64,000 nt of DNA, from the NCBI RefSeq assembly GCF_003918875.1, contig NW_025766747.1:1116001-1180000 (forward strand). Reading direction: 5' to 3'. Below are positions 11,301 to 64,000 of the stretch, piece after piece. The number at the start of each line of letters is the position of its first letter. The first letter of the stretch is position 1. The translations under genes and the position numbers were made by a program. The stretch is from Haliotis rubra. Taxonomy: Eukaryota. Below the pieces are notes generated by a model. It searched no databases. It saw only the letters and a program-made list of their open reading frames with translations, and had not been told where the DNA came from.

Positions 11301-14300
11301 TTAATGAACACAGTCACAGATAGAAGTGTCTCTAGGGAGATGGTCGACACTTGTTCTAGTTGTTGCTTGAGTAAAAATAGTTGTTTCTGTTTATATATAT
11401 GTAGAATAATCGAAATATAATTACACTTACATATACGCTGTACGTTGTGTCGTAAATCTCCTTCCACAGATTTCTCACTCATGTTAGTAAACGATATTCT
11501 ATAGCTGAAACATTGTATAAAGGGATATGTGGTTATGTTCATGCATTGCTGTAATCAATAAATTCGCTTATAATTTTGAGAAAACGTTGTATTGTATCCC
11601 GCTAAACATTTATGAATGTTGCAGGCTGACAACTGCATGGTGACCGTCTGTTAAGTCAGTGTAGCATATAAAATATTACAGTTACGATACAAGTACCATA
11701 GCTTATTTCCCACTTAATCCGCACTTACTTAAGTCCATCTTTTGATACTAAGCATGATCCACCTTTCCGTTTGTCGAATGCCTGAGATATTTTAGTCTGT
11801 AGAGAGTCGGGGTACAGTCTCCACTGACCCGCCCCATCCTGCCACTGCCAGACAACAAGGGCATTGGACATACGTCTAAGTGCTGAAAATAGCAAGAGTC
11901 GTGTCAAATATATCGAGGTTATTGGACATATTAATTGTACTTATTGCATAAATAACATTATCACACCATGATATACATCTTCAAACATGGACATGTTATA
12001 CCACTGCTACTAACACTACTACTGCTGCTCATGAGTATCTAATACCAATACGAATACTCTAGTACTAATACTAATAGGTAGCCTAGTGGTTAAAGGGTTC
12101 GCTCGTCAAGCCGAAGATCCGGGTTCGATTCCCCACATGAATACAATGTGTGAAGCCTCTTTCTGGTATTCCCCGCCGAGCTATTGCTGGAAAATTGCTA
12201 AAAGATGCTTAAAACTAAACTCGCTCACTCACTAATACTAGTAGTGAAACACATACAAACGGTTACTTCAACAGCATGATACATGTCATATCTTACTTCC
12301 AATTGTCGGTGGTTTTGGTGGGTCGGGTTCACGTAAGTGCTCTGGTACAGATGGTTCGGGACCGAACTGATAAGGGTCACTGAAAAGAGTTAAAATAGAC
12401 ATCTATACTCGAGAGTGTTGGTTTATGACATATTTTAATATTTTGATTTGGTTCTTGTTTCGTTCGATTTTTGGCATGGTCACAATTGTACATGGGTAAT
12501 ATCACGTCCATTAAACTACAGAGTGTGAAGAACTATATACAATGTCCAATATTCATGAGTACAACGGGGCACTTCAATTTGCAAATTATTTCCAGTGCAG
12601 AATAAAGACATACTTATAATGAACGTTAACATACCATATGTGTAGTTCAAACACGCCGTCCATGCCATGTTTATAACGTCTTATGTTGCCGTTGTCCCAT
12701 CTGACCTATAACGTAGAAAGGTGTGTGTTGGCCTTGACGCTATTTTGCCTTTGTACAAGTTTTGTTTTAATGTGAGATATGTACGAATACAAAGCAAATG
12801 TGATTAAGCCAAAATGTCCTTTTCACACGTAAGTTGGTGAATTTGGTCAAGTCCGTTTTGGGCCTCATAATGTGGAAGGAATGTCGAAAGAAGCAGTTCT
12901 GTGAAGCCAGGGGTACTGAATAGTACACATACTGGATCATAGCTGAGGATTATATAGATTCAGATTCAGATTCATTTTAATCAGTATTTCGGGCCTAAAG
13001 ACCTATAGTGCAAATACACTTACTACAGTTAAGTGCACGTAGTGGTGGTGACATTTCTTGCATGGAAAACATGTTTTACATAAATTGCAACATCAATGTT
13101 GTGATGAGGATTATATACTTGATCTGCGAGACTGTAAAGAGCGTCTTGGACCAATTGGTCACCTGTACCCTGTAAAGGGTGTTACCTGACTGTCATGTGT
13201 TACCTTGACCTCGGTCTTCCCTCTCTTCCTGATGACGACGCCGGTGCTCCCTTCTCCTCCATCCTCGTCATCAGTGTACCAGTGTGGACCTGCTCAAGTA
13301 GCTCCAGGTTAATACTTACTGCCATAACTATTTGACATAGGTGAATTTCCTATTTCGTTGAATTAAATTGTTATCGTCAATATGCTACAATAAGCTATCA
13401 ATGTATGTCTATAAATGCTTGAATAAGATCCCTTGCTGTCAAATATCTAAAAGACCAATCCAGCTCCAAAAGTTACCTTCTCACGAAGCGTAGACATTTC
13501 TCATTGTGATGAGTAAGCTTTATACTTAACTGCCATTACTCAATATTGCACAAGTAAGGTTTGATGGGATACGTAGATTTGGAAACGTGAAACAAGATCT
13601 ATAGATTATCAGTATAATATATACTTTTCACTCATACCTCTCGTGACTCGGACCCCTATCTGAATGTCATCTGAATCTGGTATGCGGGGTAGACCATCAA
13701 CAAGAATGACGTCATAGTTGTTGTCCTCTCCGTACCTGTACACATTCTGCTCTCCGTTATCCCATTTCACCCAGAGCCATTCTTCCAGACAAAAACAAAG
13801 TCATATGTCAAGGAGGGTTGACAAAACTGACACTTTCGAACATTTATTGTTTGCAATTTAGAAGTAATCGAGACAAATGACTACTTACTATCAAGACGGT
13901 TATGGTTTATGATAGTGCCGGGACCTTCCGTGTCCTGGTTTTTCCACATCCATTCCGGACCTCGCATAACTCTTGATCCGAGAGGGGGAAACATTTTGAT
14001 ATCTTCGTGAATGTCTTCAAAATCATCAGGTTTTCCTTCGGTCTTGTGGGTTTTCATCTTCACGTTGACATCGGCTACAATTTCCCTCTGCAAAATGCAC
14101 AGAATCAGTTAAACGAAGATTTCACATTTTGTGCAGATGGATATAATGTAGAATTATGAAATATTATTCAATTACACCACAGTCTGGGTACGTATCGTAT
14201 GACGGTCTATACAATGGCAAAACCATCTTAATATCCCAAACAGGTATCGATTTCTTACCATTATCCTATAAAGGGCATGTGCCATACATTGGTCTGCAAT

Positions 14301-17300
14301 ATATATGTAATGTAAATAAAATAGATAGTGACTTTACAGATGGTGATGAGTCAGGCCCCACCACAGTTGTCTGGACACTTATCGACTGGATTATTTTGAT
14401 AGGCCACACAAAGGAAAGTAGATATTATAATTCTACACATTATGGCCTAATTATGGATAACTGCTTTTACCTTATCCTCCGGCAATAGATTCGGTAGGAG
14501 GCCTTCAGCCACAGCTTCAACAGCTCCTGATATGTTCTCGTAGTATTCTTTGTCCCGCAGAACGCAGCTGGCCACCTTGCCAATGCCCTCCTGGAACAAG
14601 ACGTCAGCCTACTCAGGTCTCCGTGACAAGGTTTCCTCAATATCAACACATGCGGTATTATTATATAAATACAACAACTTAGTTAACTTTGATCATCTGT
14701 ACATAAACTGTTACCGTGCAGATCAAATGTTTTTGTTAAGTGCAATGATTTATGCGGGAGAGACCATGCAAGTTAAGGTTTACACTGGCTGCTTGTACCT
14801 TACATGTGTAACACCTGTATAAATTTTACCTGTATTCTGTAGTAGCGACATAGCCTTGGAATGTCCTTTTCATCTGCGAGAAATCCATTTCCCAATGTTG
14901 CAAGTGATTTCAAGAAGTCCTAAAATTTAACATAAGACGTCAGTGCTAAAGGAAATCCCTGTCTAGACTATCCTCAGAAACAAATTCCACTTGGTGTAAA
15001 GGGAACGTACATGTGAAGTAATGGATCACTTACAAGTGGTGGCACCAGGTGTTCGCCAAAAGGGAAATGGCATCCCCTTTAAACATATTACAACACTATG
15101 TTTCTGTAACGCTATCCATTCGAACAACAAATGCAAGAATAATATGCCAAGAATGCAGCAAATGCAAGAATAATATGTCATATATGCAATAAGTACTACA
15201 ATGATACCTCATAAATGTAATACATATAACAATGATGTCATGAATGAAACAAATGCTACAACGTTGTTTCATAAATAATAAAGAAGAACAAGGTATACAC
15301 GTACCTTATCAGCATCATCTCCGACTGGAATCCATATTATCGGGTTGGGTGTTTTGCTGGATTTCTTGGACCCAAAGTCAGTGACCAGTCGAATAATAGG
15401 CAGTTTATGCTATGAGACGTAAAGAGCGAGTAAGCATTTTTTACATTGTGTCAGTACGTCTGACGTTCGCAACCAACCCTCATATAAAAGGATTACAGAA
15501 CGTTATAATATTAACTACCAACTGCATTAGTAATTACTAATTCATCAGTAATTGTCCAAAATGACAATTGAATTAGATGACGCTTACCGACATACTCCCC
15601 GGATCATTGTCTGGTCCTGACCACTGAGCTTCATTGGTTGGTCTGCCATCTGTGATAAACAGCACCCTTGGTCGAATCTTGTGACATCCAGCTACGTTTA
15701 CGATTCGCCCTGAAATGACATACCAATGACAGGTCCTTGTTTAACTGAAGTACTCTGAATGACACTGCTGACACAGTGTGTATGTGCGTACAGTGCAATG
15801 CATTACATGTATTGTAGAGGAGCTGTGGTTCTCACCTTTCCCCTGCAATGAAGCCAGGCAAACCATAAGAGCTTCAAAGAAGGGTGATCTTCCAAAAGGT
15901 TGCAGTGAATCTGTAAATAAAAGTGAATGATAAGTTAGATTGTTAGTCAGATCAATTTCAACAAGGCATTAAACAATTTACTGTATTGTGTAATACATTT
16001 GCTTGCTAATATAACTAAGCATGTCACACAACGACGTGTAAGACAAGTTTGAATGGTCGAAGGGAAATGTCTAAATGTAAATTAAAAAGAGATTTTGCTG
16101 CGAAGGTTTCATCCTTACTTCGGTATAGTACACTTCATTTTTTCAACATAAACCCCTAAAACGTCTACGCACTCCTGTGGGAGATGCTCTTGTGTCTGAT
16201 TCCCACTTGTGCAAAAGGTATTTAGAGGCCTGAAAGGTCAACCACAGCAGTCATGACGGCATCACCAGCATCAGTGATGAACTTGGAGAATAGGCGGATG
16301 TTTAATACGTTCATGCATTCTGCAATGGCAAAATAAGGCACTTGCATTGCCAAAGTGAAGAAATACACGTTTAGTGTGTGTTTTCCTGACTTCATATCCT
16401 TGATATTCTCACGCAATTGCATATGCATAATTTTGGATAAAGAAGATTTGATCTCTCGGAGATTGTCCAGTAGTAGAATTCCTTTGCCAGCTGAGGGTAC
16501 AGACTCTGCCTTCTTCAATGGACATTTATTCATTGCTTTGATTGTTGGGTTGTCTCCGGCTGACATGGCTGAACCTTCGTCTCATCTGTGTTATAAGACG
16601 GCGAGCACAACCAGAGTGGATACCTTTATCACTGATAAGTTCTACGACAGTCAGGATCCAACAACAGTGGCTTCCAGCGAGCTGAAACGTCTGTCATGCC
16701 CACAGCATTCCTCAGAAATTCATGTTCTCAATATTTCATCACAGGTACCTACTGCGCTGACAATTTCGAATTTCTCGCGATATGGGTCGTCGTTATACTT
16801 TATCATCAATTTCTTTAGTGATGGCTGTTAAATTATTTCCTGATCTTGGATCATCTTCGAGCCTCTCTCTTCCCGCTTGAACTCCGGTCTCTGCCCCTTA
16901 ACAGTGACATGGTGTCCATAATAAAGACCAAGTTCAGTTGAATATACTTCGATATGATAGCCCGTCAACCATTTTTTGTTTTCATTAACAGAGAAGACCT
17001 GGTCACTTCGATACCTGCAGAAATATGTTCCTTGGGTGTGTACGGGAGTCAGCAAGCAAGCATATGGTATTTCAAGGGTGTATGTTAAGAGTGTACCACA
17101 CATGCTTCGTACTAAGACTCAGAACATTTGAGCCATCCCTTGTAAATGGCATTCATCGTCACCCTTATTGTTTTCAACTTACCTATAGCATCTCGGACTC
17201 TTGTAAAGTCATTTGTAAGATGCTGGATAACACTAGCCTCGCCAGCTATCTTGACCACGGCGACATTTTCTTCAAGACCATATTGCTCTGCTATGTCTTC

Positions 17301-20278
17301 TAAGCCTGAAAATGTTCACTACTTTCACCAAGTTTTCTAACTGAGTAAATGAAGAAATTCTGTGTTGCTGTTAAAAATTCTGGATATATTTGGAAACTGT
17401 TAGAAAGGATGATCCAGTCGACTAAGGCGCCGTATGCAGAGTTGTGTCCCCAGGGCACGCAAGGAAACTATGATCGTTGGTTCGAAAACCCAATAGCCTC
17501 TAACATATTTCGGGGTTTGACAGCACTACACCCATGCATGAGGGTCTAATATTTCCTTCAGCTAGGGATTTCTGAACACTGAGGAAGATTATAATTCATG
17601 AAAATAGTTCAAACATTGCAACTTCATTCAATACACTTCACGTTCTCACCATCTACAAATGAGTGGGCAATCCTTTTCACGTCTTCTATTTTCTCCATCA
17701 TGCTCTCTGATGCATCCAGACATAATATTGTATCCAGCGAATCAGCTCGTGGTGGAACTGGCACTTCTGACATAATGTAAAAATAGCGAATGGGTGTAAA
17801 GATATGGATATGTCATTTATAGGTTACAAACCCGCCTATCCAACTGATGTGAATCATGTCCTGTCACAAATGTTAACAATACATGTTGGTAATACTTTTT
17901 GAAAGCTTTACTATTGTCGCGAATATTTTACTCGTCATCGGAACAACTTTTGAGCCTAAAGAGTCACATGACTTACGACAAACGAACACGTCGGAACTAT
18001 CCGCCATTGTTCTTATTGAATCTAACATGATCTGAATCTGTACATATGAAGATGTAGAGATAAGTCTTCGTGGCAAAAATACACACCATCCATCTTTGCT
18101 CTTTCGACAGCTTCAGTCAGTCTGAGTATCTGTAGATCTTCTTCAGCACCACCACCTCGAGCATGTCTCATCAATGCCATCATACCTTCAGATACGTTGC
18201 CTGTTCAACGAAACAACTTAACAATATCAGTGCTCTGAAAGTCCCCTTTTGGTGTAAAAGATGTTATTAAAGATAAAAATCACATCCATAACCGTTTACA
18301 ACATATGTACCTTCTTTCATTTTAACTGTCGTCCGATCTGGCGAAAACGCAGTGCCCTGGGAGGATCTGAGGCAAAACAATATACATAAAATTTAGTGTG
18401 ATCTGTCAACCATATTATTTATTCGAGGAAAATGGATCTCATCGTCAGTAACATTGGATTTGAGATCAGTATCATTTCGGGCTGTGAACAAGTACATTAA
18501 ATACATTAAAAAAGAAACATGAAAACCAACAAATGTAGAAGATACTTACGTCTCTTGGGATTGGAATGATGGTGATGGTAGTTTCTTGTGATCTGCATCC
18601 GCTTGATCCGAGGAAGGTTGTTTGAGTTCCAGTTTTGGTAAAACATTTGCATATTCACCAACCGCGGCTTCACCCTTGAGACTGATTAACATGAGAAAAT
18701 AGTCATTATTTAAGTAAACATATACATAGAACTTTCTGAAGTACCGAACGGACACCACTCACCTTTCAGCCAGATCTGCTTTACTGACTGGTATTCTTGC
18801 CCCTCCTTGTTGCAAGTTTGGGAGTGGAGATGGATTTGTGTTAGATACTGCAAGCCGAAGCTGTTTCATTTGTGAATCGATAGGCAGACCACGGTCTGGT
18901 ATGGTGTTGGGTGAGGATGGAGATCTCTTCATGGATTCTGTTCGCATCTTCAGATCTTCCTCAATGCCAGCCAGCATGCTTAGGATCTCATTAAGTTCAC
19001 TCTGATCTGCGGATTCAACATCACGTAAATAATTACCTTTGGATATTCACATGCTTTACTTTTATTTCATGTAAGATATGTCCATCCTCATTTGAATGGT
19101 ATAAGGCTGAAACTTACATCACATAATCTACTACAAACATACCAGTATTTCTTCGATTCTCCTGCGACGACCCCCTTGTCATGAAAGTGGACCTCATACT
19201 TGAAGAGGCAAGAGATCTGAAATTTATATTCATACCTGTCATTTCTAAAACATATCTCAACAATAATCTCCACATAAAAGGTGATGGAAAGACCCTGTAC
19301 CTATATAAAAATGTAATAACCATTCCTCAAGAAAGGTTTAACCACTCATTTCCACATTATTACCATGGTAACAATTAAACTAATATGGAAGATTCAGGTG
19401 TGCTTTAACTTATTGTGAGCAGCATAGTATGTCAATGCTAGTATTAATATTGTGTGGAACAGGACAAGACGTTTCATATTGATATAATATTTCATAATTC
19501 CTGCCGGCTTTGTTCCGCAGCAGATGACCAATGCTTTTCAAGGTCCCTTTGAGTTGCCTCGTCCATGTTGTATCTCAGGTGCTCCACATCACCAGTTTCA
19601 AAGATATCCAGTGACACTTCTGGTACAGTTTTTGTACAGTCAAATACCAAGTCTTTGAACATTTTCTCTAGATTAGTCCTCCCTTCTATCATACTTTGCA
19701 GTGAACATTCATCCTGATGAACCACCTCAAAAAGAGTGGACTTTGGAGTGACGGCAACTACCATTGCCTTGTATTCCTTATACACATTTGCAACAAACTT
19801 TCTGCAGTGGTTGAAATTGTCCTCTTCAAGACCTGAACACATTGAGTTTTGGAACGAAGGGGGCAAATATGTTATGCTAAATTGTAGCTTGGTAAATTTT
19901 AGTGTTGCTGACAGATTAAGATCATTCCAGACGAATGTGAGGAGCCTTTGCTTTTGTTCGTGATCTGAAAGGAATAAATGAAAATTGTATATACACCTGT
20001 CATAAATCATTAAAAAATGCAAAGGAATTCCTGTCATGCTTGCCTACTTTTTAGAAGATAAATGTTTTAAAAAAAAACTTGTAACGTGTATGAGCGATTA
20101 ATAGAAACTCTACATTTGGTTCACCTTGTAGACCCACGTCTAGTACATGGATGTCCACTATGGTACAGCACTGCCCAAGTTTCACAAGTCTGTTCCCTTC
20201 CACCTTTCTGAAATGTACCTCTTCTGCGACCAGACTGCCATGACTATGAAGGTGCCCAGAAGCATTTTCTAGAGACAT
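11301..20278 (-). CDS. Paralogue A: multi-exon gene, N-terminal unannotated domain - VWA - 2x MIB/HERC2 - WWE protein
   Basis: Exons 5'->3' (approx.): 20278-20125 (putative ATG MSLEN), 19963-~19505 (N-domain), 19217-19143, 19006-18763, 18675-18549, 18366-18311, 18200-18087, 17860-17828, 17766-17650 (DTILCLDASES MIDAS), 17305-17183 (GLEDIAEQYGLEENVAVV), 15910-15836, 15709-15587 (RVLFITDG), 15409-15305 (PIIWIPVG), 14919-14830, 14590-14471, 14088-13889 (PPLGSRVMRGPEWMWKNQDTEGPGTI, MIB/HERC2 #1), 13782-13638, 13289-13204 (GPHW..DGGEGSTGVV, MIB/HERC2 #2), 12705-12635 (VRWDNG), 12379-12297, 11882-11729 (VWQWQDGAGQWRLY, WWE), 11504-11431, 11365-11301 (TAA). Phases are compatible except for an uncertain donor after the N-domain exon. 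The start codon is uncertain. Confidence 0.85.
12075..12233 (+). mobile_element. tRNA-derived SINE (family 1)
   Basis: A-box-like TAGCCTAGTGG, B-box GGTTCGATTCC, a body shared with the copies at 40530 and 45192, and a (CACT)n tail. Confidence 0.85.
16100..17020 (-). mobile_element. Decayed mariner-type transposase fossil in an intron of gene A
   Basis: Frameshifted fragments match mariner transposase motifs in order: EFKR..LEDDPRSG..TAITKEIDDKV, KKAESVPSAGK(deletion)GILLLD, LRENIK, an HPP(Y)SP-like segment and DAVMTAVVDL. Many stops and deletions; TIRs not resolved. Confidence 0.8.
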
Positions 20279-22346: not shown

Positions 22347-23409
22347 ATGTATGGTGGTATGGGATGTAATCATGTCGGACACTATTCATGTGGACATATA
22401 ACGTACTGGTTTATGATGCGTGCTATCTGCATTGAAGGTCGGTCTGTGTATGTAGTTGTATGTACAGTTAAAAACTATCGCTGTAACAGCAGCCATGCAT
22501 GTGTGCTGGAGGTGTTGGGTTATCAGTTCCCAACATGACTGAACTGATAACTAGAATAACAGTTTCAAAGTTGATATTTGAGCGTTGATGTGATACTTCA
22601 GTGTTGACTGTTCGGCTAGCTCTCCACCATTTCAGTAAGTGCTCTGATGTAATATATATCCCGTGGGTGTTAATGCACGGAGTTGGTTCACGTACTGAAC
22701 ACATTCCAGATGGGAGTCGGGTGGACAGGTTTCATTGAGCAGCAGAATATATACACCGACAGCATCTTTGGGCTGTCTACAAACCACCAACTAATACCAA
22801 ACAACATAATACTTGATAGTACATGCGTTCTGGCATAACTTATATAAAGAATTATTTCAAATGTAACTTATGTTAATGCATGATCTTGTACTGTTGATAT
22901 ATTTTAGGTATGTCAGTATTAAGGGATTTTTTCTCTGGAAATGATTCAAGTGATTCAGGTGATTTACTCTATCAAAGAAAGTGTTTTTCATTTAGACCTA
23001 AAAGTCGCACACATGACACAGTGCGGGGATGATGTGTAACGACTGAAGAGGGAACTCCGGAATTAATGTCAGGTTCCTCTGGATCCCCATCTGTACACAT
23101 GGAGGGGTGCTGTGACATAACTATAACCAGGCACTTATGGAAGTTCCTGGAAGATGGGCATAACCGTTCAGGTAATGGTGGGCTGGATAGGTAGACTTTT
23201 TTCTCACGACAGGAAGTGGGGGAAGGGCATGTCAGGAGACAACTCCCGACCCTCATGAATAGAATAAATATAACACTGTGACCAACACCAACATACAATA
23301 ACTTAAATAGTATTTCAGTTAGTTTATAAAAGACGTTTATATTCACTATGGAATCAGTATATGTCAAGAACAACAAATATACTCCAAAGTCGTTACTGGA
23401 TGTGGATGC

Positions 23410-23500
23410 TGAAGTGAGTGAGTTTGGTTTTAAGCCGCTTTTAGCAATTCCAGCAATATCACGTCGGGGGGCACCAGAAATGAGCTTGGCACATTCATGT
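23410..23500 (-). mobile_element. 3' fragment of SINE family 1
   Basis: GTGAGTGAGTTTGGTTTTAAGCCGCTTTTAGCAATTCCAGCAATATCACG is the reverse complement of the SINE 3' end and tail. Confidence 0.75.
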
Positions 23501-23571
23501 TGAATCAAACAAAACATATGCAATAGATACAAAGTATCGTACAGCTGCTTATACAGCATTCCTTGTTTTAG

Positions 23572-35626: not shown

Positions 35627-35729
35627 CTAAACAGTAGCTCTATACTGTTAAACTGTACATGAGGTGACACAGTTGCTGTATGCAGACTGGATACGTACAT
35701 ACCCGGAATTTTACTCTAGCTGTGTACCG

Positions 35730-47846: not shown

Positions 47847-49234
47847 GGAGAATATATGCAACAAATAGTCGAGTTTGCAGAAACATGCAAAAACAGGAAG
47901 GGTGGTGATTGTTATAAAAGTCCCATTATATAACAAACTGTCAATTAGAGGACATGTATAACACTATTCGTGTGTTGTTTGTTTATTGGTTAGCGCCGCA
48001 CTCAGCAATATTCCAGCAATATGGAGGCTGTCTATAAATAATCGACACTATATGCATTGTGCATCACGTTGACAGCCATTTCCCATTAGTACCTGTAGTT
48101 TTAAATATTTTCTTTCTTGTTTACACAGCACAACAACGATAGCTGATTAATTCTCATACGTTTCAGTAATGTATTTCTTAATTTCTTAAGCTTTTTCACT
48201 ACAAAGGTTTACAGTTTAACACGTCAGTACTGAATACTATTTTCAATAGCATGACTGTGCACATGCTTATCGCACATTTGAATTAGAAAGGTCAGCTTAT
48301 CATCAGTTAGGCACACATAAAAGAACCCACTCGACAAAACTGCAATTCGTTATTTATGGTAACAGCTGCATGCACGGTCTAAAAATATTTATTTGAAAAA
48401 GTGGAACCGGATCGGAAAACAAGCAGCATGTTGCTGATCTGAATACCGCTCCGAGATGCAAATACAAAACAAAATAACTATAGTTTTCTGCGTATAACAT
48501 TTAAACTACTTGTGTCGGAAAGTAATATAGAGTGCTACAACACAAATGTGGCTGGCAATACAATGAAAGAATGCCATTGGATAGATTCTAATATTTCAGG
48601 ATTATCATTAGTAGATCCATTTGAGTAGCCGAATAGGAATTAATAATCAAGTCATATCCCTTAGCATAAAGGTACATTCTAGTTCTTATACCATTGCATG
48701 TGCTTGAGATACACTAATATAATCTGTGTTGCTATGCGTGTGTTACATGTGTTAGTGATAGGGACATATAAGGACAAATATGTAGATCTGCAAGAAACAT
48801 TGACATATTTTGGTTGCTTTCATTTGCAGACAAATACAGTACGTTCCTGCACGGTAACAATAGAGGAATGTGTTTACTAATCACACACTTGTCATGTACT
48901 ACATATGCACTATAATATAGACATTATTCTTTTCAAATATAGTCGGTTATTAGTGCAGGTTTATAATCATGATCAACATATTTTATCAGTGACCTACTGC
49001 CACAGAAACAAGAAATTATGTTGCCCAAACTTCATGATATAAGACTCATTCAGTAAATATAACAAATGTGTATTGATTGACTAATTTTCATTTGGTGGAA
49101 AATGACCGTAAATCTCATCATCTTTCCACATCAAGTAATTTCCGTCATACATGTTAGTCACAGAATCTCATACAGTGTCAGTGTGTGTGCCCTTCAGTCC
49201 TCACTTTCATTTTGAGATATGATCAGGAAGTATA

Positions 49235-51300: not shown

Positions 51301-52379
51301 TATATACATACACAATACCTGAATGGATGGAAGACCTATGGCGTGTACGAACCTGTTTGACCTGTGCCTCGCTCAAGAAAACACTCGTTAAAGAATACAT
51401 CCACTACAACATGTGAGGGGTCATCTGTAATCACCTGTCCATTGAGGGTGCATCGAATATGTAGGTCTCCCATGGCAATCTACAAACAATCATTTGTGAC
51501 AAAATAATACAATCGTAAGGTTATAATTAAGTATAAGTACCATATGGGGGCAGACACTGTTATCATTCTTTATTCAATATAACTGCAGATGCTGTAGAAA
51601 TAGAAGCATAAACATATATGAATATGCATGTAGTTGTACTAGCCCTTGTGCTTGTGCGAGAAGCCCCGACTTACTATCATGTGATCAACTGAGCAAGTCG
51701 TTGTCATGTTACTAAATATAGATTTAGGCGACACTGGTACCGAGCTTATCAAACATGTGATTGTTACTTTAAAATCGATATGTTTGCCTATCAAGGAACA
51801 AGGATAGAAGGCGTACTTATCTGCACGTATTCATTCAGTTTGCAGTCTTCCAACACACTTGCCAGTGGTACTTATATCCTCGATCTTGCTAAATATAGAC
51901 ATGACATGGCGTACATGACCTGATCACCCACACGGCAGATATCTGTATACAACTAACTTGCCAGTGGGTTACGTCCCCTTAGTTGAATATCACAGGATCA
52001 CTCGGCTCGAACTGTTCAATATCCACTCAAGTGTCAGCTTGTGTATGTTGGTAATGAAATTCAAGATCTATGTTCACCAAGGTATTGCCAAGGACGCGTG
52101 TGGTTCCTACATTTGATTTCTGACTTATAAATGTGTTTGCAAAGCATACATACTGGTTCATTGTTTTGTTTCAATAGTCACAATTCATACAAGTATAATC
52201 TTTTGTATAACAACGACCTCCCATTAGAGAGATTATCAATATGACAACTGATATTTTATCATACAAATTGCTTCATTCAAGTCACAGAGTCAATAAGTAA
52301 ATATGACTCTACATATATTCTTAATATCACCAGCTTATAAGGTACTGACAGGTGTATGGGCTGAGAATCTTCCTTCCAC

Positions 52380-55719: not shown

Positions 55720-58700
55720 CTAGTCCTTCTGATTTACACCTGCAAAAGGAGGTACAATATCATCGACTGAAGTTTTGTACCATTACTCAAAATACTTCAT
55801 TCTTCCAAGTAGAAATATGCATGTATCAACCGTTTTGGGGGGTAGACGTCCAGCTCTTAGAACATTTACAGCTCTTAGTTGTGCCTTGTCAAAGCAATAA
55901 AAGTGGATTTTTCAGAGTCGATTGACACTCTGCGTATCTAACGAATATAATAAAAACTGTGATCCACTCACGTATTCTTCTTACTCTTCGCTTCGAGGTA
56001 CCATCAATTCTCTTTTCGTGCCAGTCCTTGAAGAGTACTCTAAAACTGTAAGATATTTATAAACAATGACACTGTCAAATAAACGAAGAATTGTGTGTTT
56101 TTTATAGAAAATCGAGAAATGATTTTCCTAAATATGTTTTTTAGACCATACTATTATTATACATACATCTTGTGTTCAATACTAGACACACTATCTGTAA
56201 TACCTCTTCTTCTTCTGGCGATGAAGACACTCAGTGCCAGCCATAATACCGTGCAAGGCTTTCAACAAATACATTGGCAACACATACATCTTTGAAGTAT
56301 CTATCTTCGCAAATAACTGCAATATCCTGAAAATTGCTCATCCCGTTTCTTATTATTTGTTTTCAAACCTGCATTCTAAAGCGTTCTTTCACAACATACA
56401 TACACCCTACTCAAGTAGCCTTAAGTTGTTATTACCTTGTGTTGTCTCTCTGTATCACACACGATCCTGTGGGGCGTCTCAGGTATTCCTTCTCCAGTTT
56501 GTGCATCTCCCGGTCTCCATACAACCGCCATTCATCTGACCCAGCCTCCCACTGCCACGCCCACTGTCCTACACCTGGTGCTTCTGCAGCAGCTGTTTAT
56601 AAGAGATGAAACAGTCTTACGTTTACATCAGAAAGATTAAAAAAAACATTAACATGGTTAAGACAAAGCTTCTCAGAAACACCAAAAAGTAATTTTAAAA
56701 AGTATTAAGTTATTCACATCATGTATTTAACATTTGTTTTATGTAGATATCAATCTGCAAATATCCTTAAACATTTAAGTGGTTATGGCAATGCATCATT
56801 TACCGTCATCTGGTAACGCTTGTCCAGGAGCGGCATCAGTTTCAAAGGAATTCATTTCAGTCTGAGTAAGCTCCATCAAACACTCGGCAGGATCTCTGGT
56901 CAGATAGACAGAAACATATACAGTATTTTGTGTCCAATATATCCGTCGTTTGTGTGAACACATTAGTTTTACTTTTACAGTTACATCAATGAACATGTGA
57001 ACCGGTAGAGAATATTGTTTGAGAAATTGACACATTTCAAACATACGGAGGTCTTCTTGTACCTGATAGACAAATCCAACTTGTCACCCTTCCCAAATCT
57101 GTATTCGTTGATGTGACCGTTTCGATTCCATCGGACCTACATAAGAGTTTATTTCATTCATTATTATACAAGTTTATAGATGTGCACAGGCAGAAATGTA
57201 AACCAAAATAGTTCTTATGTTCCCATACATTTCAACAATTGCAATTACCGCTAAAACGCTTCTCTATATCTATTTACAACACTGTTACCTTTACTTTGCC
57301 CCGGTTGTTTTTGCGGATGACAACCCCTATGCCCCCTTTGCCTCCATCCTGGTCCAAATATTTGTCCTTCCAGTCCGAACCTGTGGTTAGACATTTGTGT
57401 GTGTTAATTGTTTCAAGCTCATAGTAGTACACGTGACTAAGCTTAGCTTATCTTAACGTCACAGAACAATACAATATTGCTACAATACCGATGGTCCCTA
57501 TTACCAATGTGAAAACAGATGCTAATGAACCTGCATCTAATAACTTGGTACACTCAAACACAACTATGTGAAACATGCTTGTTTCGAAGTAAAATTTTAT
57601 CCTTCGGATCACTCGAAGCAATTGCTAATGTCCGTCCGACCTCGACACAGATGTGTATGACTGTGTATATTATGCTTATTGTGTTATTAAAAGCCTTTCA
57701 CCTTGTGAAACTTCAAAGAGTAAGGATTAAACTGTGTAAACATTGACGCTTATTGTATATGGAAATACCATAGGGGATATTCGATCAGGACATGACACCA
57801 TACACAAGACGTATATTAAGATGATCTTTCTTTTCAGGTCACATGTTTAAGGATACGGACGTGCATATGTAATGTTCCATGTTCATGAGAAACCTAACGT
57901 ATTTCTTTACCTCGTGTCACCTCACAGCCGATCTCTATCACCAGTTCCGATGGAGTTATCCTTGGTTGGTCGTGCACTACGATCACATCCCTTGCGTTCT
58001 GATAACCATACCGATATTGCTGACACTCGCCATTGTCCCATGCAACCCATAGCAGCTCTGTTACAATAAAGATACATACTATCACAACTTTCAAATATGA
58101 AATGGAGCAAAATCGTAATTTTTTTAATTTTTACTATGCAATATCAAAACCTAAACAATGGAATGGATAATATTGTATTGCCTTAAATTACTCTGATATT
58201 ATATTCATGAAAGAGATTCACTTTTGTCATCGTCGTCTCCTTCAGTGTGATTGATGACTGTCCCTGGACCCTGTGAGTCCTGGTTTCCCCATTTCCACTG
58301 TGGACCACGGACAACTCGAGACCCAAGCCGGGGCAGGCTCTCATCTTTGAATTCCACCACGTTTCGAAAATTTTGGGTAAGAATCTCCGTAGAAAAGGCA
58401 TGACTGGCAAGTCTCTGTTCGATCTTTTCTTCAATTGCAGTAACAACAGTTTCCTGAACAAATAAGTAAAGTATAGACACGTACATCTGCTATCATAAGA
58501 CAATTGTTAAAGGCACAATGTCACACATTTTCGACAATAGTTTGGCTTTATTATATATATTGGGGCATATGCACTCACTTTAGCTTCATATTGACGCAAT
58601 AAAAGACTTAATATCCCTTACGACTTGAAATCGATAATTGCAACTTTGAAGCGACCAGAGAACACTTGCCATATATGGAATGTAAACAAATGCTGGAACT

Positions 58701-61700
58701 TTTTAATGTACGTACGTACTTTTTGGAATAAATTATATGGTAGCTTCCCTGAGGACTGATAGTTAGTATTCCTGAGAGAAATATATTTTTTTAGAGAAGT
58801 GTGTATGATATATTGCCTTCAAATGCATGTTCAGATAAAAGTAATCAATTGTATAATTATTCGACAAACTGACCTTGTCATCAGTGTCCAAATGTTTGTC
58901 AATTCCGTTTACTACGGCAACAATGTCATCAGAATCAACTTCGGTTTCCTCCTCAGATATAATCTTTTTCTTGATGACCGCATAAGATTGTCCAATAAGA
59001 ATCTGCAAGTAAGTATTGAGTGTTATACATATGAGTACATCTTCATAATACCAATTGCTTACATTGAAAATTTACAGGATATGGCTTGTAACTTGTGTGG
59101 GTTAATAGACTGAGGCAGGACAATTCACCAACAGGTGTAAGACATGGTGGCTTCTTGGACAAGTATATATCATTATACTGCAAGAAATACCTGAATACGC
59201 TGATACTTGCAAAGATCACCAACATCTTCACGTTCTACAAGCACGCCGTTATCCATGCTTCCCAAAGTCTCCAGAAAATCCTGAAAATTCCGTATAATAT
59301 CTAATTAATGAGACGATACAAATCTTTAACTGATTTACTACGGTACCCTTTTTGTGTGAGGAATTAAAGCAAATTTACAAGTATTGAGGCATATGTTTAC
59401 ATTGTAAACACAAAAGTAAACCAAAAGGTCCACACACTGTTTTTGTGTCTGCACTCACTGACATTGAGTACGGGTACAGCAGTGAAGTGTCATCAGCCGG
59501 CCGTTTCGGCTGTCTCTCATGGTAGCATCTTGAACTGCTCATTTGTGACGTCATTTGGAATTTACGTCACAATATGATTTGAATGATGTCATCACAGCTG
59601 ACGACGTGACAATACAATGGTGTGAGCGATGTTTGTATGTATTAATACGCAGCGAATTTCCGGGAATCGAATACCATTTGATCACGTTTTTCAACCAATC
59701 AGATTAAAGAACACAGTCACTTTGGGTTTACAATTTGCATTAGTTCAAAAGGTAAAACAAACATATATTAACTGTACCCTGTTTGTGTTGCCAATAGGAA
59801 CCCACACAAACGGATTGGGGAATGCGGTCTCACTTTTCCTTTCACCGAATTCTTCCATCAGTCTGACAACCCGACGTTCTTCCTGTACAACAAGACAGAT
59901 TAATTGTTATCACGTTTTGGTTTTCAATCAACTGAGTCCAAAATATACACAAAGGGGACAAAACCCGCATTCACAAATCTCTGCTAAGCAATAGTTTTTA
60001 AATACCTACAACACCTGTGCTTGGTTCAGTCTTCTTGAAGATGTCGTTGTAAACAGTTGCTTGTAAAAGGCATAAATGAAGTACTAAATGGTTTGGATAG
60101 CCTCATGAATTTACCGCATGTATCCACTCGGATCCTTGAAATATGGACTGAGACTCACACTCTCCATATCCCCAACGTGATCAGTACTTCCAAGTTCATC
60201 AGCAGTACTTCCATCCGTAATGACGATTACTCTGGGTTGAACTCGATGAACACCCTTTATGTCAAGATCACCACCTGCATATAGAATTATTATATACTGA
60301 AAGGCAAAAGAAATGTCGTAATATTGGAAATGTCATTTAAGTATCAATTGAACATTTGAACCTATTTTTTCAAAATAATACGCCACTGAAATGCAGTACC
60401 GACTTTCATCAGAGAAGATAACCCCTCTCCATTGTCCCCCACGACAGTTTTGCCGCTGTTGTGTCCACTTGGATACGTTCCCGGCGATGACGTTGGGTGA
60501 ATATGGGTCTCCTGGCAGGACATCGACAAAACAGGTTCCTGGCTTGGAGACGTCGCCGAATGGTAGGTCACTGACTGGTCGCTGGTGGTTTCCTATGGTC
60601 ACCCACGCTGTTTCTCTGCCCCTTGCGAATAGGTTTTTAAACGTGTTGATGGACGATATGACGGTCCTGGCGACGTGTAGTTACACGGGGTTGACCACTA
60701 CGTGGACGGTCATCAGTGCTGCTGGTGGCGTTGTATCGCATTCTAAGACGTTCTATCGTTCGTACGCTGCAACTGAAGTCATTAGCAATGACTCGAGCAT
60801 GTTGACCAGCGTGCAGACGTCCAATAGCTTGCTGTGGTTGATCTCTCGTTAACCTAGTCATAGCTGCTGTGATCAGAAAACAAGTGAACGGTTGCCGTTC
60901 AAGCCGGCAATTTATTCCTGAATGCATTTCAATGTTGTGTTTGTTGGAACTTTTCCCTCTCCAAAAACACAAAAACATTTCTAACTTCAATCTCAAACAA
61001 TACTTTATTGGGCAATACAGGCTATACGACCACGATTCATGTTTCCTCAAACTTGACTTCGGTGTATATTAAAAAAAATAGGTTCAAATACTCCATTGAT
61101 ACTCAAATGTCATTTCTAATATCATGACGTTTCTTTTGCCTTTCAGTTTATCTACAAACAGGGTTTGTTGGAGTTAGCATATAATGTTAACGTTGGACGC
61201 CAGTCCGTACCATTGCATAAGAAAGACTCCAGTGTTGTAAAAGGAAAAGTGAAAGCAACCTACCTCTTCCCAGTATGGCACAAAGGCAGACTAGAAGTGT
61301 TTCGAACATCCAAGAGCGTCCACCAATGTGTAAGTTCTCTGGAAAGGTGAAATTGCATTAAACGTTGAGCTTTGTAGACCTAATCAGAATGGAAGATTAG
61401 TTCATTCTTTGTTAATATGATCATGTGAATAAATCAGTTCTTTATATTGCCCGTTTTTTTGTTTTGTAGGAGAGAAACTGACTAACCTATAACAGCCCTG
61501 AGACTTGAGTAGTCATTACTAAGGTGATGAACGATGCGGGCGGGGCCTCCACAGGACACGATGGCAACGTTCTCCTCCATCTCATACTCAGCAGCAGCAT
61601 CTTCAACTCCTGAACATACACAAGTCACACAGATTTAAGTAAAGGAATATTTCATAACGTGTAGAATATTAAGGCGAAACTTTGTTGTGGAGTTCTTGCC

Positions 61701-64000
61701 TTGAGTCTAGAAACACGCGTGAACTGTTTATTCAGCAAGATTGTGGCTACTCACCGTCTATAAAACTATATGCGGTTTCCTTCATCTTTTTAATTCCTCG
61801 CTCGCTCATTGTGCTCGACGTGTCCAGACACAAGATTGTATGGAGGCCCCTGGCAGTTGGAGGCATAGGAACATCTATATACCGAAACCAAACACAGAGA
61901 ATTTAGTTATAGAGACATACCACCAACTGTCACTTTGTCAAATAATTTTTAGATCAAACAAGAAATTATTGCAGCACTTTCAATGCCTACCATCCTTCAT
62001 TGCAGATTCCACGGTGGCTACCAATCTCTGAACCCCAGCTGAAGTTCCTTGGACACCATAGCGACTGAGGAAACTTCGTGCCTTACCTAAGAATTTAAAA
62101 ACATTTTAATTAATTGCAATAAGGTTTTTTTAAGCTCCTAAAGCATTAGTAACATACTTTGTTGAATATGAGATAAACTACATATCATTCTAATGATCGT
62201 AATGGTGATGAAATAGCCTTATTGTGAACGGCGGATTATACTGGTAGAGTAGAATATGCCAACCCTATTAGAGAACACCTAGTGTCGTCACTGATTTTCG
62301 GTGATCTATTCATCTAATTTTCGTCTATCATGCTAAAATGGTATCTGTTTCGTCGGACGATTGAGACTGATTATTCCCAGTGGTTGAGGAGTGATATTGT
62401 TCAATCACGGCTTCATGAAAGGCATGCATCTCTAACACTGCATGGAATATGTCAATTGTCATTAGAATGAAAACGATTTTACCTACCGCCGGTGCTGCCA
62501 TCTAGTACCGATGAATGCAAAGTCTCCACGGGTAAACTGGATCGACAAAACGTTCAGAAAATTAAGACTGAACACAACAAACGCTAAACACAAAATAATC
62601 GAATTACATACATAATATGGTGCCCTACATACAACAAAAACATTTTCAGAAGACCCAACAGTGTTGTTTTGCAAAAGTAAATGCTTTGATGATGATGTTA
62701 GATTGAAAATACATTGAAAAAATGTAAGGCACCCTACCCAGGAGGATCATCTTCGGAGCGACTGTCCAGTTCTAGGCAAGTTTCATTTCTTGTAGTGACG
62801 GATGGTGAATGGTCTTTTCTAGCATCCTCCCCGGACAGCGTTGATTTGAAGACAGACTGGTGTTCGGGATACGTATCTTTCATCTCCTCAGTGGAGGAAT
62901 AGTTAGCAGGTTCTTCATCGTCAGAAAAGCAGTTATCATTATGAGACACTTCCGACGTCGTGGATGGGGTGGTAAAAGAGTTCTCCCGTTGGGATTGCTC
63001 CATCCCTGACTTTCCTTCAAACGAACCGGGCATTATTTGCTCTTCTTCAGACCCTGTGTCCACTTCCTGTTGCTCAAAGCCTAAGTTCGTGATGCTATCA
63101 TTACCAGTTTCTGCCGTGTGCCCGGTAGTGCCATGGAGAGAAACCAGCGTATCATGCTGGCATCCTCTAGTTTCATCAGAGATACCAGCACTCCTTCCAT
63201 TGTGAGTTTTGTCGACCAACTGATGAACAGAGTGAGCCAGCTGCTCGACTGAGTGCCTTAGCTCCTCGTTGAATGCCTTCTGCTCATCAAACCGTTTTCT
63301 AACATCGATCTTTTGACGATGTATATTTTCCTCCAATAAGCCGAAACGAACATCAATCTCAGAATCTAAAAGTAGATTACCTCCTGTCATTGTCATGTGA
63401 AGACTAATACAGTTACCAGGCGAGACAGTTACCTGGTTAGTTATATAATACATTCAGTACAAGTTCTAAGATTTCTTACCGTTGTGTGAAGTGTCCAGAT
63501 TCTGTGACCCTCCCGATTTGGAACTGTTTGAACAAAAGTAAATCATGAATTAAAGAAACATCAATGCAACAGCTTTCGTTAGTTATCATCTACATATAGT
63601 AACAAAGCACAAAAAGACGTGGAGACGAAGTGATCAGGCAGTTAACTTTTAACAGCATTTATCAATAAATGAATATTAACAGCAAACTCATCTATTCTGA
63701 ATACAAGAAGAGGTATAATGTACTTACCTTGTGTCCCCCTCTCGCACAATCATGACAGGCACATCTTCACTCTCAGTCTCCGATCCATATATGGTCATGG
63801 TAAATTCCATATCTTCAGCTACGAAATCCTGCTCTTGGTCCTGTACATGCAGAGTAAGATCAAGTGAAATATTTGTGTTTGTGGACTCTGAAAACGCACA
63901 CTTCAAGATATTTTCCAGCTCACCAACACGAGATGCTAAGTTGTCAAAACCGCCAGAACTGCGATGAAGGAGTTCTAGAGCAAATGGTTGACTTTGTACT
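55720..64000 (-). CDS. Paralogue D (5' end outside the window): N-terminal unannotated domain - VWA - 2x MIB/HERC2 - WWE protein
   Basis: Exons (approx.): >64000-63729, 63523-63480, 63384-62738, 62536-62487, 62086-61991, possible microexon 61932-61921, 61874-61755 (HTILCLDTSST), 61609-61487, 61338-61264, 60275-60159 (RVIVITDG), 59882-59778, 59280-59191, 59002-58874, 58453-58222 (LPRLGSRVVRGPQWKWGNQDSQGPGTV), 58058-57911, 57380-57289, 57136-57063, 56896-56804, 56590-56436 (WAWQWEAGSDEWRLY, WWE), 56045-55972, 55739-55720 (TAG, tentative). Confidence 0.86.
59401..59734. mobile_element. MITE in an intron of gene D
   Basis: Terminal inverted repeat ATTGTAAACACAAAAGT / ACTTTGGGTTTACAAT with internal TGACGTCA-type motifs. 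Confidence 0.6.
60297..61146 (-). mobile_element. Internally deleted Tc1-family transposon in an intron of gene D
   Basis: About 80-bp imperfect TIRs (CTGAAAGGCAAAAGAAATGTC...GAACCTATTTTTT / AAAAAATAGGTTC...GACGTTTCTTTTGCCTTTCAG). Transposase N-terminus MTRLTRDQPQQAIGRLHAG...PRSGQPRVTTRRQDRH, truncated after FSDESRYCIS. Confidence 0.92.

What the first reader, a model, noticed from the sequence alone, without database searches (positions are those of the whole stretch)
11301..64000. Four-gene tandem family with an unusual non-catalytic architecture: novel N-domain - VWA - 2x MIB/HERC2 - WWE
Seen: four diverged paralogues share exon structure and intron phases and carry VWA (DxSxS, TDG), two MIB/HERC2 repeats (G.RV.RGP.W.W..QD..GPGTV; V.WDNG..N.YRYG) and a terminal WWE. 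Each ends within ~30 aa of the WWE, with no RING, HECT, PARP or macrodomain. Established: MIB/HERC2 is the substrate-binding module of Mind bomb/HERC2-type E3 ligases; WWE occurs in Deltex, RNF146 and PARPs and can bind iso-ADP-ribose; intracellular VWA domains scaffold complexes such as Rpn10. I do not recognise this combination in any characterised protein. Inference: a lineage-expanded family of ubiquitin/ADP-ribose signalling adaptors, sensors or decoys, plausibly immune given local duplication and fast divergence. This is the best candidate for an undescribed system in the window.
Basis: partly seen in the sequence, partly recalled or inferred. Interest (0 to 1): 0.85.

Follow-up and report, generated by a model that had tools for sequence, protein, structure and literature searches.

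The report
Abalone VWA-MIB-WWE adaptor gene array
The window holds four intact genes from a roughly 20-copy tandem array in blacklip abalone that encode large enzyme-free scaffold proteins (N-terminal adaptor-like domain, VWA, two MIB/HERC2, WWE); the family has never been studied, brachiopod relatives were already catalogued among predicted apoptosis/immunity adaptors, and its function is still untested.

Summary
The window is Haliotis rubra, contig C1857:1116001-1180000. Its four genes (A = LOC124280418, B = LOC124280417, C = LOC124280415, and D) match RefSeq "uncharacterized" proteins residue for residue. From the VWA domain onward all four share the same intron phases. Each scores above Pfam cut-offs for VWA, two MIB/HERC2 and WWE, and each ends 6-32 aa after the WWE. 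None has a RING, HECT, PARP or macro domain. Spliced RNA contigs confirm 13 introns of gene B and run past its stop codon.

- The four genes belong to about 20 copies spread over roughly 400 kb.
- Genes A, B and C have 1:1 orthologues in other Haliotis species, so the duplications are old.
- The MIDAS metal site is invariant in 64 relatives.
- The adenine-binding glutamine of the WWE is Glu in A, C and D and Gln only in B.
- The N-domain is an RRM/ferredoxin-like fold.
- Homologous Lingula proteins are listed in a supplement of Kaur et al. 2021 as CARD+TRADD-N+coiled-coil+vWA+MIB+MIB+WWE.

The likeliest reading is non-catalytic apoptosis/immunity adaptors; that part is inferred, at about 0.5. 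The scan found the same cluster on a neighbouring window (s1-347352). I class it as a new variant of a known kind, of moderate interest.

The parts
11432..20278 (-). Gene A (LOC124280418, protein P0075, 951 aa): 21 coding exons in the window. The last exon (19 aa plus stop) lies about 2.2 kb before the window start.
   Evidence: Exact protein-to-genome mapping with GT-AG/GC-AG introns. Last exon found in L008. Name.
19505..20278 (-). Gene A N-domain exons (aa 1-204; domain aa 35-174)
   Evidence: jackhmmer E 1.6e-35; alignment A1
14830..17766 (-). Gene A VWA exons (aa 412-622), MIDAS DASES...GRSP...TDG
   Evidence: Pfam VWA_2 42.7 bits against a cut-off of 27; alignment
12635..14087 (-). Gene A exons for the two MIB/HERC2 domains (aa 663-828)
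   Evidence: Pfam MIB_HERC2 79.2 bits, 2 stretches
11432..11882 (-). Gene A WWE exons (aa 857-932); Glu at the adenine-binding Gln position
   Evidence: Pfam WWE 35.9 bits; alignments
23066..35140 (+). Gene B (LOC124280417; P0151 1004 aa, P0001 971 aa): 22 coding exons, stop TAG at 35138-35140. Exon 26589-26687 is skipped in isoform X3.
   Evidence: Thirteen spliced joints in RNA contigs of 4 runs, which continue past the stop.
23066..23941 (+). Gene B N-domain exons (aa 1-158)
   Evidence: AF2 model with pLDDT 84 and pTM 0.82, RRM/ferredoxin-like core; jackhmmer
28814..31819 (+). Gene B VWA exons (aa 447-655), MIDAS DVSES...GASP...TDG
   Evidence: Pfam VWA_2 52.5 bits; AF2 plus Foldseek to the Rpn10 and BatB VWA domains
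32749..34046 (+). Gene B exons for the two MIB/HERC2 domains (aa 697-865)
   Evidence: Pfam 86.3 bits; PDB MIB1 2.1e-13, HECTD1 1.5e-11
34497..35137 (+). Gene B WWE exons (aa 891-973) and 31-aa tail exon; Gln retained at the adenine-binding position
   Evidence: Pfam WWE 35.4 bits
38451..51473 (-). Gene C (LOC124280415, P0032, 1032 aa): 19 coding exons. The last one (38458..38451) carries 2 codons plus TGA.
47409..51473 (-). Gene C N-domain exons (51473..51353 and 47826..47409), separated by an intron that holds a 75-bp repeat array
   Evidence: jackhmmer 3.9e-19
41874..44278 (-). Gene C VWA exons (aa 509-719), MIDAS DTSGS...GTTP...TDG
   Evidence: Pfam VWA_2 53 bits
40025..41400 (-). Gene C exons for the two MIB/HERC2 domains (aa 760-926)
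   Evidence: Pfam 86.6 bits
38720..39216 (-). Gene C WWE exons (aa 950-1030); Glu at the Gln position
   Evidence: Pfam WWE 30.9 bits
55720..63999 (-). Gene D (P0037, 1058 aa): aa 148-1058 in 20 exons, stop TAG at 55722..55720; aa 1-147 lie beyond the window end
63728..63999 (-). Gene D, C-terminal part of the N-domain exon (domain aa 66-195)
   Evidence: jackhmmer 6.7e-26
59191..61874 (-). Gene D VWA exons (aa 511-720), MIDAS DTSST...GRSW...TDG
   Evidence: Pfam VWA_2 30.4 bits
57063..58453 (-). Gene D exons for the two MIB/HERC2 domains (aa 764-944)
   Evidence: Pfam 86.1 bits
55972..56592 (-). Gene D WWE exons (aa 976-1052); Glu at the Gln position
   Evidence: Pfam WWE 30.8 bits

Best explanation
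The four genes are intact members of a tandem array of about 20 copies in Haliotis rubra, and at least gene B is transcribed. They encode cytosolic proteins with no enzyme domain. Each protein has, in order:
- an N-terminal RRM/ferredoxin-like domain of about 140 aa;
- a helical (coiled-coil-like) segment;
- a long, fast-changing disordered linker;
- a VWA domain with an invariant MIDAS metal site;
- a helical linker;
- two MIB/HERC2 (SH3-like, peptide-binding) domains;
- a terminal WWE.

Shown: gene structure, domain content, the lack of any catalytic domain, family size and spread, and homology to Lingula proteins whose N-terminus is CARD+TRADD-N.

Inferred: they act as multivalent adaptors in apoptosis or innate-immune signalling. 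The C-terminal VWA-MIB-MIB-WWE block would bind a target or a modification: an acidic ligand through MIDAS, a peptide motif through MIB, and a nucleotide-like ligand through the WWE, canonically only in gene B. The N-terminal domain plus helix would recruit or oligomerise downstream partners, as Death-fold and TRADD-N adaptors do. The N-domain is probably a strongly diverged TRADD-N-type module, but this is not proven.
For: Gene models, splice sites and identical intron phases.
Pfam domains above cut-off and nothing else.
Spliced RNA contigs of gene B that pass the stop codon.
MIDAS D-x-S-x-S...S/T...D invariant in 64 relatives.
VWA model nearest to the Rpn10 and BatB VWA domains, and MIB part matching the MIB1 MZM module.
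N-domain found in 28 or more cluster representatives, with a confident RRM-like model that has a kinked first helix.
About 20 MIB-exon copies at C1857:918k-1322k.
1:1 orthologues across Haliotis species.
Lingula homologues carry CARD (Pfam 27.2 bits).
Kaur et al. [quoted passage not shown]
A 'GSL[IVL]F' turn between beta2 and beta3 occurs in several mollusc N-domains and matches the Lingula TRADD-N 'GSLIF'.
Against: There are no functional or pathogen-challenge data.
The adenine-binding Gln of the WWE is Glu in A, C and D and in 41 of 64 relatives, so ADP-ribose reading may be lost or altered.
No Death-fold domain occurs in the abalone proteins.
The N-domain shows no significant link to TRADD-N: Pfam PF09034 gives no hit, hhalign probability is 0.1-0.3%, jackhmmer finds nothing, and TRADD is not among the top structural matches.
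Structured domains are well conserved between orthologues, which does not look like an arms race.
RNA evidence covers gene B only, from one study.
Confidence: 0.5

Rival explanations
1. The proteins are substrate-recognition or bridging subunits for separately encoded ubiquitin ligases in housekeeping or developmental signalling (Notch/Deltex/Mind-bomb-like or proteasome-linked), with no role in immunity.
For: MIB/HERC2 domains are nearest to those of MIB1 and HECTD1. The WWE is nearest to DTX1 and TRIP12. The VWA is nearest to Rpn10. A UIM-like helix is conserved in the gene B orthologue group. Structured domains are well conserved between orthologues.
Against: A 20-copy tandem expansion limited to molluscs and brachiopods is unusual for core developmental machinery. 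The brachiopod homologues carry CARD+TRADD-N. No ligase gene lies within the window.
Confidence: 0.22
2. The proteins are decoys or dominant-negative regulators that soak up ligands of Mind bomb, Deltex or PAR-dependent ligases, or are guarded targets of pathogen effectors.
For: They carry binding modules but no catalytic domain. There are many diverged copies. The WWE pocket residue varies between Q, E, M, A and others.
Against: The strictly conserved MIDAS site and the conserved N-domain plus helix suggest an active output end rather than a passive sink. There is no direct evidence.
Confidence: 0.1
3. The N-domain is a palm-type (GGDEF or nucleotide-cyclase-like) enzyme that makes a signalling nucleotide, so the proteins would be catalytic after all.
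Confidence: 0.03
4. The loci are decaying or mis-annotated copies without function.
For: Introns are rich in satellites and transposon fragments. Only gene B has RNA support here.
Against: All four reading frames are intact across 19-22 exons with canonical splice sites. Motifs are invariant. Orthologues are retained in four Haliotis species. Spliced transcripts of gene B exist.
Confidence: 0.03

Closest known systems
[quoted passage not shown] 4-source data 1
   Same: The VWA-MIB-MIB-WWE block is homologous (P0128 E 3.9e-54, P0216 4.1e-42). The order is the same: N-terminal alpha+beta domain, helical segment, VWA, two MIB, terminal WWE. Neither has a catalytic domain, both are lineage-expanded, and neither has been studied experimentally.
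   Different: The abalone proteins lack the CARD. Their N-domain is not recognisably TRADD-N by sequence or profile. The gastropod copies are not in that catalogue, and the paper states that non-bivalve molluscs have only the NCOA6 orthologue.
Mind bomb E3 ligases (MIB1/MIB2)
   Same: Both carry two MIB/HERC2 domains of the same Pfam family, and MIB1 is the nearest solved sequence relative. One oyster family member is auto-named 'E3 ubiquitin-protein ligase MIB2' (K1Q222).
   Different: There is no ZZ finger between the MIB domains and no REP/SH3_15, ankyrin repeats or RING fingers, so these proteins are not ligases.
Deltex (DTX1/2/4), TRIP12 and RNF146 WWE-containing PAR-dependent E3 ligases
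   Same: The WWE profile matches DTX1 (3e-17), TRIP12 (5.7e-10) and RNF146 (2.9e-4), with invariant Trp residues.
   Different: There is a single WWE at the C-terminus and no RING, DTC or HECT domain. The glutamine that bonds the adenine ring in all solved complexes (PMC11269756) is Glu in A, C and D.
Rpn10/S5a proteasomal ubiquitin receptor (VWA + UIM)
   Same: The Rpn10 VWA is the top structural neighbour of the VWA domain (TM by target 0.69-0.71). The gene B orthologue group has a UIM-like acidic helix, EEDELSAVIAASLEE.
   Different: Sequence identity is only 17-21%. The UIM score is 12.2 bits against a cut-off of 21, and the motif is absent in A, C and D. Rpn10 has no MIB or WWE.

Membership tests
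VWA domain with MIDAS | Pfam VWA_2/VWA match above the gathering score | tested here: met
   VWA_2 scores of 30.4-53 bits against a cut-off of 27 in all four proteins
VWA domain with MIDAS | MIDAS residues D-x-S-x-S, a Thr/Ser and an Asp (TDG) | tested here: met
   D 64/64, S 64/64, S 61/64 (T 2, D 1), S/T 64/64, D 64/64 in alignment A3. Gene D has DTSST.
VWA domain with MIDAS | Metal-dependent ligand binding | not testable with these tools
   Needs biochemistry
MIB/HERC2 domain | Pfam PF06701 match, two copies | tested here: met
   79-87 bits, two stretches each; PDB MIB1 and HECTD1 matches
Mind bomb E3 ligase | ZZ finger between the MIB domains, ankyrin repeats, C-terminal RING fingers | tested here: not met
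   No such Pfam hit even at E<=1
WWE domain | Pfam PF02825 match with conserved Trp residues | tested here: met
   30.8-35.9 bits against a cut-off of 21.1; W14 and W23 invariant
WWE domain as ADP-ribose/PAR reader | Conserved Gln that hydrogen-bonds the adenine ring (PMC11269756) | tested here: not met
   Gln in gene B only; Glu in A, C and D. Across the family: E 41, Q 8, other residues or gaps 15, of 64.
WWE domain as ADP-ribose/PAR reader | Measured binding of ADPr, iso-ADPr or PAR | not testable with these tools
   Needs ITC, FP or NMR
PAR-dependent E3 ligases (Deltex, RNF146, TRIP12, HUWE1) and PARPs | RING/DTC, HECT, PARP catalytic or macro domain in the same polypeptide | tested here: not met
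   None found by Pfam. Stop codons lie 6-32 aa after the WWE. Gene B transcripts pass the stop.
TRADD-N (DEDD2-clade) expansion proteins of Kaur et al. 2021 | Homology to catalogued members | tested here: met
   P0128 = XP_013388646.1 and P0216 = XP_013421821.1 are listed in the supplement and align over VWA-MIB-WWE
TRADD-N (DEDD2-clade) expansion proteins of Kaur et al. 2021 | A recognisable TRADD-N domain | tested here: not met
   No PF09034 hit on the proteins or on the N-domain exons. hmmsearch and jackhmmer find nothing. hhalign probability is 0.1-0.3%.
TRADD-N (DEDD2-clade) expansion proteins of Kaur et al. 2021 | RRM-like two-layer fold with kinked helices and a 'uS' motif in the beta2-beta3 turn | tested here: inconclusive
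   The AF2 model has beta-alpha(kinked)-beta-beta-alpha-beta. GS or GC occurs in the turn in about 7 of 23 sequences, and Pro in most others, including C and D. TRADD is not in the top 50 structural matches.
TRADD-N (DEDD2-clade) expansion proteins of Kaur et al. 2021 | Adjacent Death-fold domain (CARD or DED) | tested here: not met
   Absent in the abalone proteins; present in Lingula
Rpn10-type ubiquitin receptor | UIM after the VWA | tested here: not met
   Only gene B has a sub-threshold match, 12.2 bits against 21

The most novel reading that the evidence does not exclude
The abalone array encodes a mollusc-specific class of intracellular sensors. A new kind of N-terminal signalling domain (not TRADD-N) would be coupled to a MIDAS-VWA/MIB/WWE recognition block. 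The re-tuned WWE pocket (Glu in place of Gln) would read a ligand other than ADP-ribose, for example a pathogen- or damage-derived nucleotide. The roughly 20 diverged copies would give a repertoire of specificities. On this reading, the N-domain-like exons found at about 20 other genomic sites would mark further families that use the same output module.
Probability: 0.15. Interest if true: 0.75.

Novelty: new variant of a known kind. Interest (0 to 1): 0.42.

Why it matters
Molluscs have no adaptive immunity, and abalone farming suffers from herpesvirus and Vibrio disease. Large arrays of adaptor-like genes that are kept intact are therefore candidates for lineage-specific immune or cell-death wiring. 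This family pairs three interaction modules that are normally attached to ubiquitin ligases or PARPs, yet carries no enzyme of its own. It keeps a strictly conserved metal site and places an unclassified domain where brachiopod relatives have CARD+TRADD-N. That makes several questions directly testable: what MIB/HERC2 and WWE domains do outside ligases, whether a Glu-type WWE still reads ADP-ribose, and whether TRADD-N-type adaptors exist in gastropods, where they were reported absent. The finding is moderate rather than striking. The genes are already predicted in RefSeq, the core architecture is tabulated in a 2021 supplement, and the function is still only inferred.

Tried and rejected
- Dimer prediction for the gene B N-domain plus helix (aa 1-235, two copies) gave no verdict (score 0.02). 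It is not evidence either way.
- Pfam TRADD_N against the proteins and the whole genome in six frames gave no hit on the N-domain exons.
- hmmsearch, jackhmmer and hhalign between the mollusc N-domain and the Lingula TRADD-N region were all non-significant.
- NCBIfam and PADLOC scans of the VWA plus linker gave only generic VWA or chance hits. There is therefore no link to the bacterial vWA-MoxR systems.
- Paper searches for the domain combination and for 14 gene or protein identifiers found nothing. Mentions of 'MIB2' in oyster papers cannot be tied to this family.
- I tried to resolve the architecture of N-domain-like exons outside the arrays. No VWA or WWE lies within 10-20 kb of them, and only transposon ORFs were recognised.
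- The 449-aa ORF at 35664-37013 is a product of a 42-bp tandem repeat, not a gene.
- The mussel fusion P0202 (VWA-MIB-kinase-RNase 2-5A) and the pearl-oyster fusion P0218 (MIB-WWE-Arf) may be merged gene models, so I did not rely on them.

Full report
**What is in the window.** The first 11,272 bases are a 24-bp satellite. The rest holds four multi-exon genes. Self-comparison of all six-frame segments gave four collinear sets of conserved exons: A on the minus strand at 11.4-20.3 kb, B on the plus strand at 23.1-35.1 kb, C on the minus strand at 38.5-51.5 kb, and D on the minus strand from 55.7 kb to the window end.

I searched the MIB exon of gene B against 1.84 billion representative proteins. 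This returned 333 hits. Four of them (P0075, P0151/P0001, P0032, P0037) map back to genes A-D with 100% amino-acid identity. They are Haliotis rubra RefSeq models named "uncharacterized protein" LOC124280418, LOC124280417 and LOC124280415; no name is shown for the fourth. The window is G000:C1857:1116001-1180000.

**Gene models.** Exact protein-to-genome mapping gives 21, 22, 19 and 20 in-window coding exons for A, B, C and D. Every intron is GT-AG except one GC-AG. From the first VWA exon onward the intron phases are the same in all four genes: 1,1,1,0,0,0,0,1,1,0,2,1,2.

- Gene B ends at TAG 35138-35140 and gene D at TAG 55722-55720.
- Gene C ends in an 8-nt last coding piece at 38458-38451.
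- Gene A's last 19 codons lie 2.2 kb before the window start. Its final intron of about 13.7 kb is almost entirely the 24-bp satellite.
- Gene D's first 147 residues lie beyond the window end.

**Domains.** Pfam gives VWA_2 (and VWA in B, C and D), two MIB_HERC2 stretches and a WWE, all above gathering scores in all four proteins. Nothing else appears even at E<=1: no RING, HECT, ZZ, ankyrin, PARP or macro domain. The tails after the WWE are 20, 32, 6 and 7 residues.

Between paralogues, identity is 46-59% in the MIB domains, 37-48% in the VWA, 26-37% in the WWE, 14-20% in the N-domain and 12-30% in the linkers.

**Expression.** Four runs of one study, labelled RNA by guess, hold contigs that cover about 16% of the sampled words of 29-35 kb, which is close to the exon share. 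Laid on 29200-35199, they show 13 joints. These coincide with the model's introns, allowing for the stated alignment slack. One joint lies 5 nt off the GT-AG pair but skips the same length.

The contigs run through the stop codon. Their loose 3' end resumes at 35626, directly after a 75-bp repeat array. This fits repeat collapse or copy-number difference and is not splicing to further coding exons.

**Family size and spread.** The gene B MIB exon finds 24 places in the genome. Twenty are on C1857 between 918 kb and 1,322 kb at roughly 20-kb spacing, and they include exactly one hit per window gene. Three are on C225 and one on C1312. Some of the small contigs may be alternative haplotypes. WWE-exon and N-domain searches trace the same array.

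Named relatives with the same Pfam set come from:
- Haliotis: H. rubra, H. rufescens, H. asinina and H. cracherodii;
- other gastropods: Littorina, Batillaria, Nucella, Babylonia and Pomacea;
- bivalves: Saccostrea, Crassostrea/Magallana, Ostrea, Argopecten, Solemya, Dreissena, Mytilus, Mercenaria, Potamilus and Sinanodonta;
- the brachiopod Lingula.

All are "uncharacterized" or "hypothetical", apart from one oyster entry auto-named MIB2.

A maximum-likelihood tree of 64 C-terminal halves shows 1:1 orthologues for three of the window genes:
- A with an H. rufescens protein;
- B with H. asinina (90% identity) and H. cracherodii (82%);
- C with H. asinina (86%) and H. cracherodii.

Most Haliotis copies form one clade, apart from the caenogastropod clade. 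The array therefore predates the Haliotis radiation. Between orthologues, the VWA and MIB domains are 77-92% identical, the N-domain 62-81%, and the disordered region 49-66% with indels.

**The N-domain.** jackhmmer from gene B residues 1-165 recovers the domain in 36 of the proteins held, including all four window proteins. Only one Trp and one His are nearly invariant.

The genome holds 43 N-domain-like exons. About 19 lie away from any MIB exon, and I could not resolve what follows them.

**Link to published work.** Pfam finds a CARD in Lingula P0128. The supplement of Kaur, Iyer, Burroughs and Aravind 2021 (PMC8195603, Fig. [quoted passage not shown] It places them within the DEDD2-clade TRADD-N expansions of marine invertebrates, which the authors predict act in apoptosis and antiviral immunity. 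The main text does not discuss this architecture. It also says that molluscs other than bivalves have only the NCOA6 orthologue.

The abalone N-domain sits in the same place, in front of a helical segment and the VWA, and has the same fold class. In about seven of 23 sequences it carries a GS or GC turn between beta2 and beta3, which is the position of the TRADD-N "uS" motif. Several read GSL[IVL]F, like the Lingula GSLIF.

Every sequence test nevertheless failed. Pfam TRADD_N gave no hit. hmmsearch and jackhmmer gave none. hhalign aligned the equivalent hairpin and following elements at a probability of only 0.1-0.3%. I therefore treat "diverged TRADD-N" as a lead at about even odds, not as a finding.

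**Binding sites.** The MIDAS residues are invariant or conservatively replaced in 64 relatives, which argues for a working metal-dependent binding face.

A 591-residue model of VWA through WWE has pLDDT 86.7. Its nearest solved neighbours are the Rpn10 and BatB VWA domains and the MIB1 MZM module.

The family WWE profile matches DTX1, TRIP12, PARP11, ZAP and RNF146. In all solved WWE-ligand complexes a conserved glutamine makes two hydrogen bonds to the adenine ring (PMC11269756). At that aligned position gene B has Gln, while A, C and D have Glu. Across 64 relatives the count is E 41, Q 8 and other residues or gaps 15. Canonical ADP-ribose reading is thus plausible for B and doubtful for the rest.

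**How it most likely works.** Shown: these are real, intact, enzyme-free multi-domain proteins in a large old array.

Inferred: they act as adaptors. The VWA-MIB-MIB-WWE block would bind a target or mark, and the N-terminal domain plus helix would pass the signal on by recruitment or oligomerisation. The support for this is the CARD+TRADD-N ends of the brachiopod homologues and the expansion pattern. I put this at about 0.5. The main rival is a role as bridging subunits for ubiquitin ligases outside immunity (about 0.2). A dimer prediction for the N-terminal part gave no verdict.

**Novelty and score.** The genes are already predicted in RefSeq. The same cluster was reported by this scan on a neighbouring window with the same reading (s1-347352). 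The core architecture is tabulated for Lingula in a 2021 supplement.

New here:
- the full anatomy of four genes and the size of the array;
- the orthology pattern across Haliotis;
- the invariant MIDAS site;
- the Gln-to-Glu change in the WWE;
- the fold of the N-domain and its unresolved relation to TRADD-N;
- the N-domain-like exons elsewhere in the genome.

I rate it a new variant of a known kind, with interest 0.42.

Noticed in passing
window 1-11272 (continues about 2 kb before the window start; L008 from about position 8000): A 24-bp satellite (unit CATCACCAGTATATATACACAGA) has about 469 copies in the window and strong strand skew. The array totals about 13.3 kb and fills almost the whole last intron of gene A, so the annotated transcript must be spliced across it.
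   Followed up: partly
window 35099-35625: A 75-bp tandem repeat (7 copies, 98% alike) begins inside gene B's last exon. It repeats the last 13 codons plus the stop and the start of the 3' UTR. RNA contigs jump from 35175 to 35626, which could be collapse by the assembler or a copy-number difference.
   Followed up: partly
window 35717-36836: A 42-bp tandem repeat (about 27 copies) creates the 449-aa ORF at 35664-37013, which is not a gene.
   Followed up: yes
window 24533-24812: A 69-bp coding tandem repeat (4.1 copies) in gene B exon 4 encodes 23-aa repeats (EADERDA..STEGVASVHGHVL) within the disordered linker. This region is where orthologues differ most, including by indels.
   Followed up: partly
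window 26977-27538 (+) and 60336-61068 (-): Frameshifted Tc1/mariner-type transposase fragments (Pfam HTH_Tnp_Tc3_2, 53 bits) lie in introns of genes B and D and are 52-81% alike at protein level over short stretches.
   Followed up: partly
window 49242-51289, 52381-54671, 29150-29697, 30495-31095, 20638-20899: There are further long tandem arrays: a 75-bp unit in gene C's first intron, 47-bp units between genes C and D, and 42/83-bp and 58-bp units in introns of gene B. The locus is unusually rich in minisatellites.
   Followed up: no
window 34344-34417 (gene B aa 866-890): A UIM-like acidic helix, EEDELSAVIAASLEE (Pfam UIM 12.2 bits, below the cut-off of 21), lies between MIB2 and the WWE. 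It is conserved in the gene B orthologues of H. asinina and H. cracherodii and is absent from the sister clade and from A, C and D.
   Followed up: partly
G000 contigs C64, C2469, C2077, C2664, C1488, C2335, C494 and others (loci L009-L014): About 19 N-domain-like exons (E 1e-8 to 8e-3) lie outside the MIB-containing arrays. Some form their own tandem series, for example four on C2469 and three on C64. No VWA or WWE lies within 10-20 kb downstream, so the domain may serve other gene families.
   Followed up: partly
protein P0202 (Potamilus streckersoni) and P0218 (Pinctada imbricata): Two relatives have an enzyme end. One is VWA plus three MIB followed by a protein kinase and an RNase 2-5A (IRE1/RNase L-type) domain. 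The other is MIB-WWE followed by an Arf GTPase. They could be real fusions or merged gene models.
   Followed up: no
window 26589-26687: An alternative 33-aa exon of gene B is present in isoforms X1/X2 and skipped in X3. It encodes a conserved helical hairpin just before the VWA, and this hairpin is present in most relatives.
   Followed up: partly
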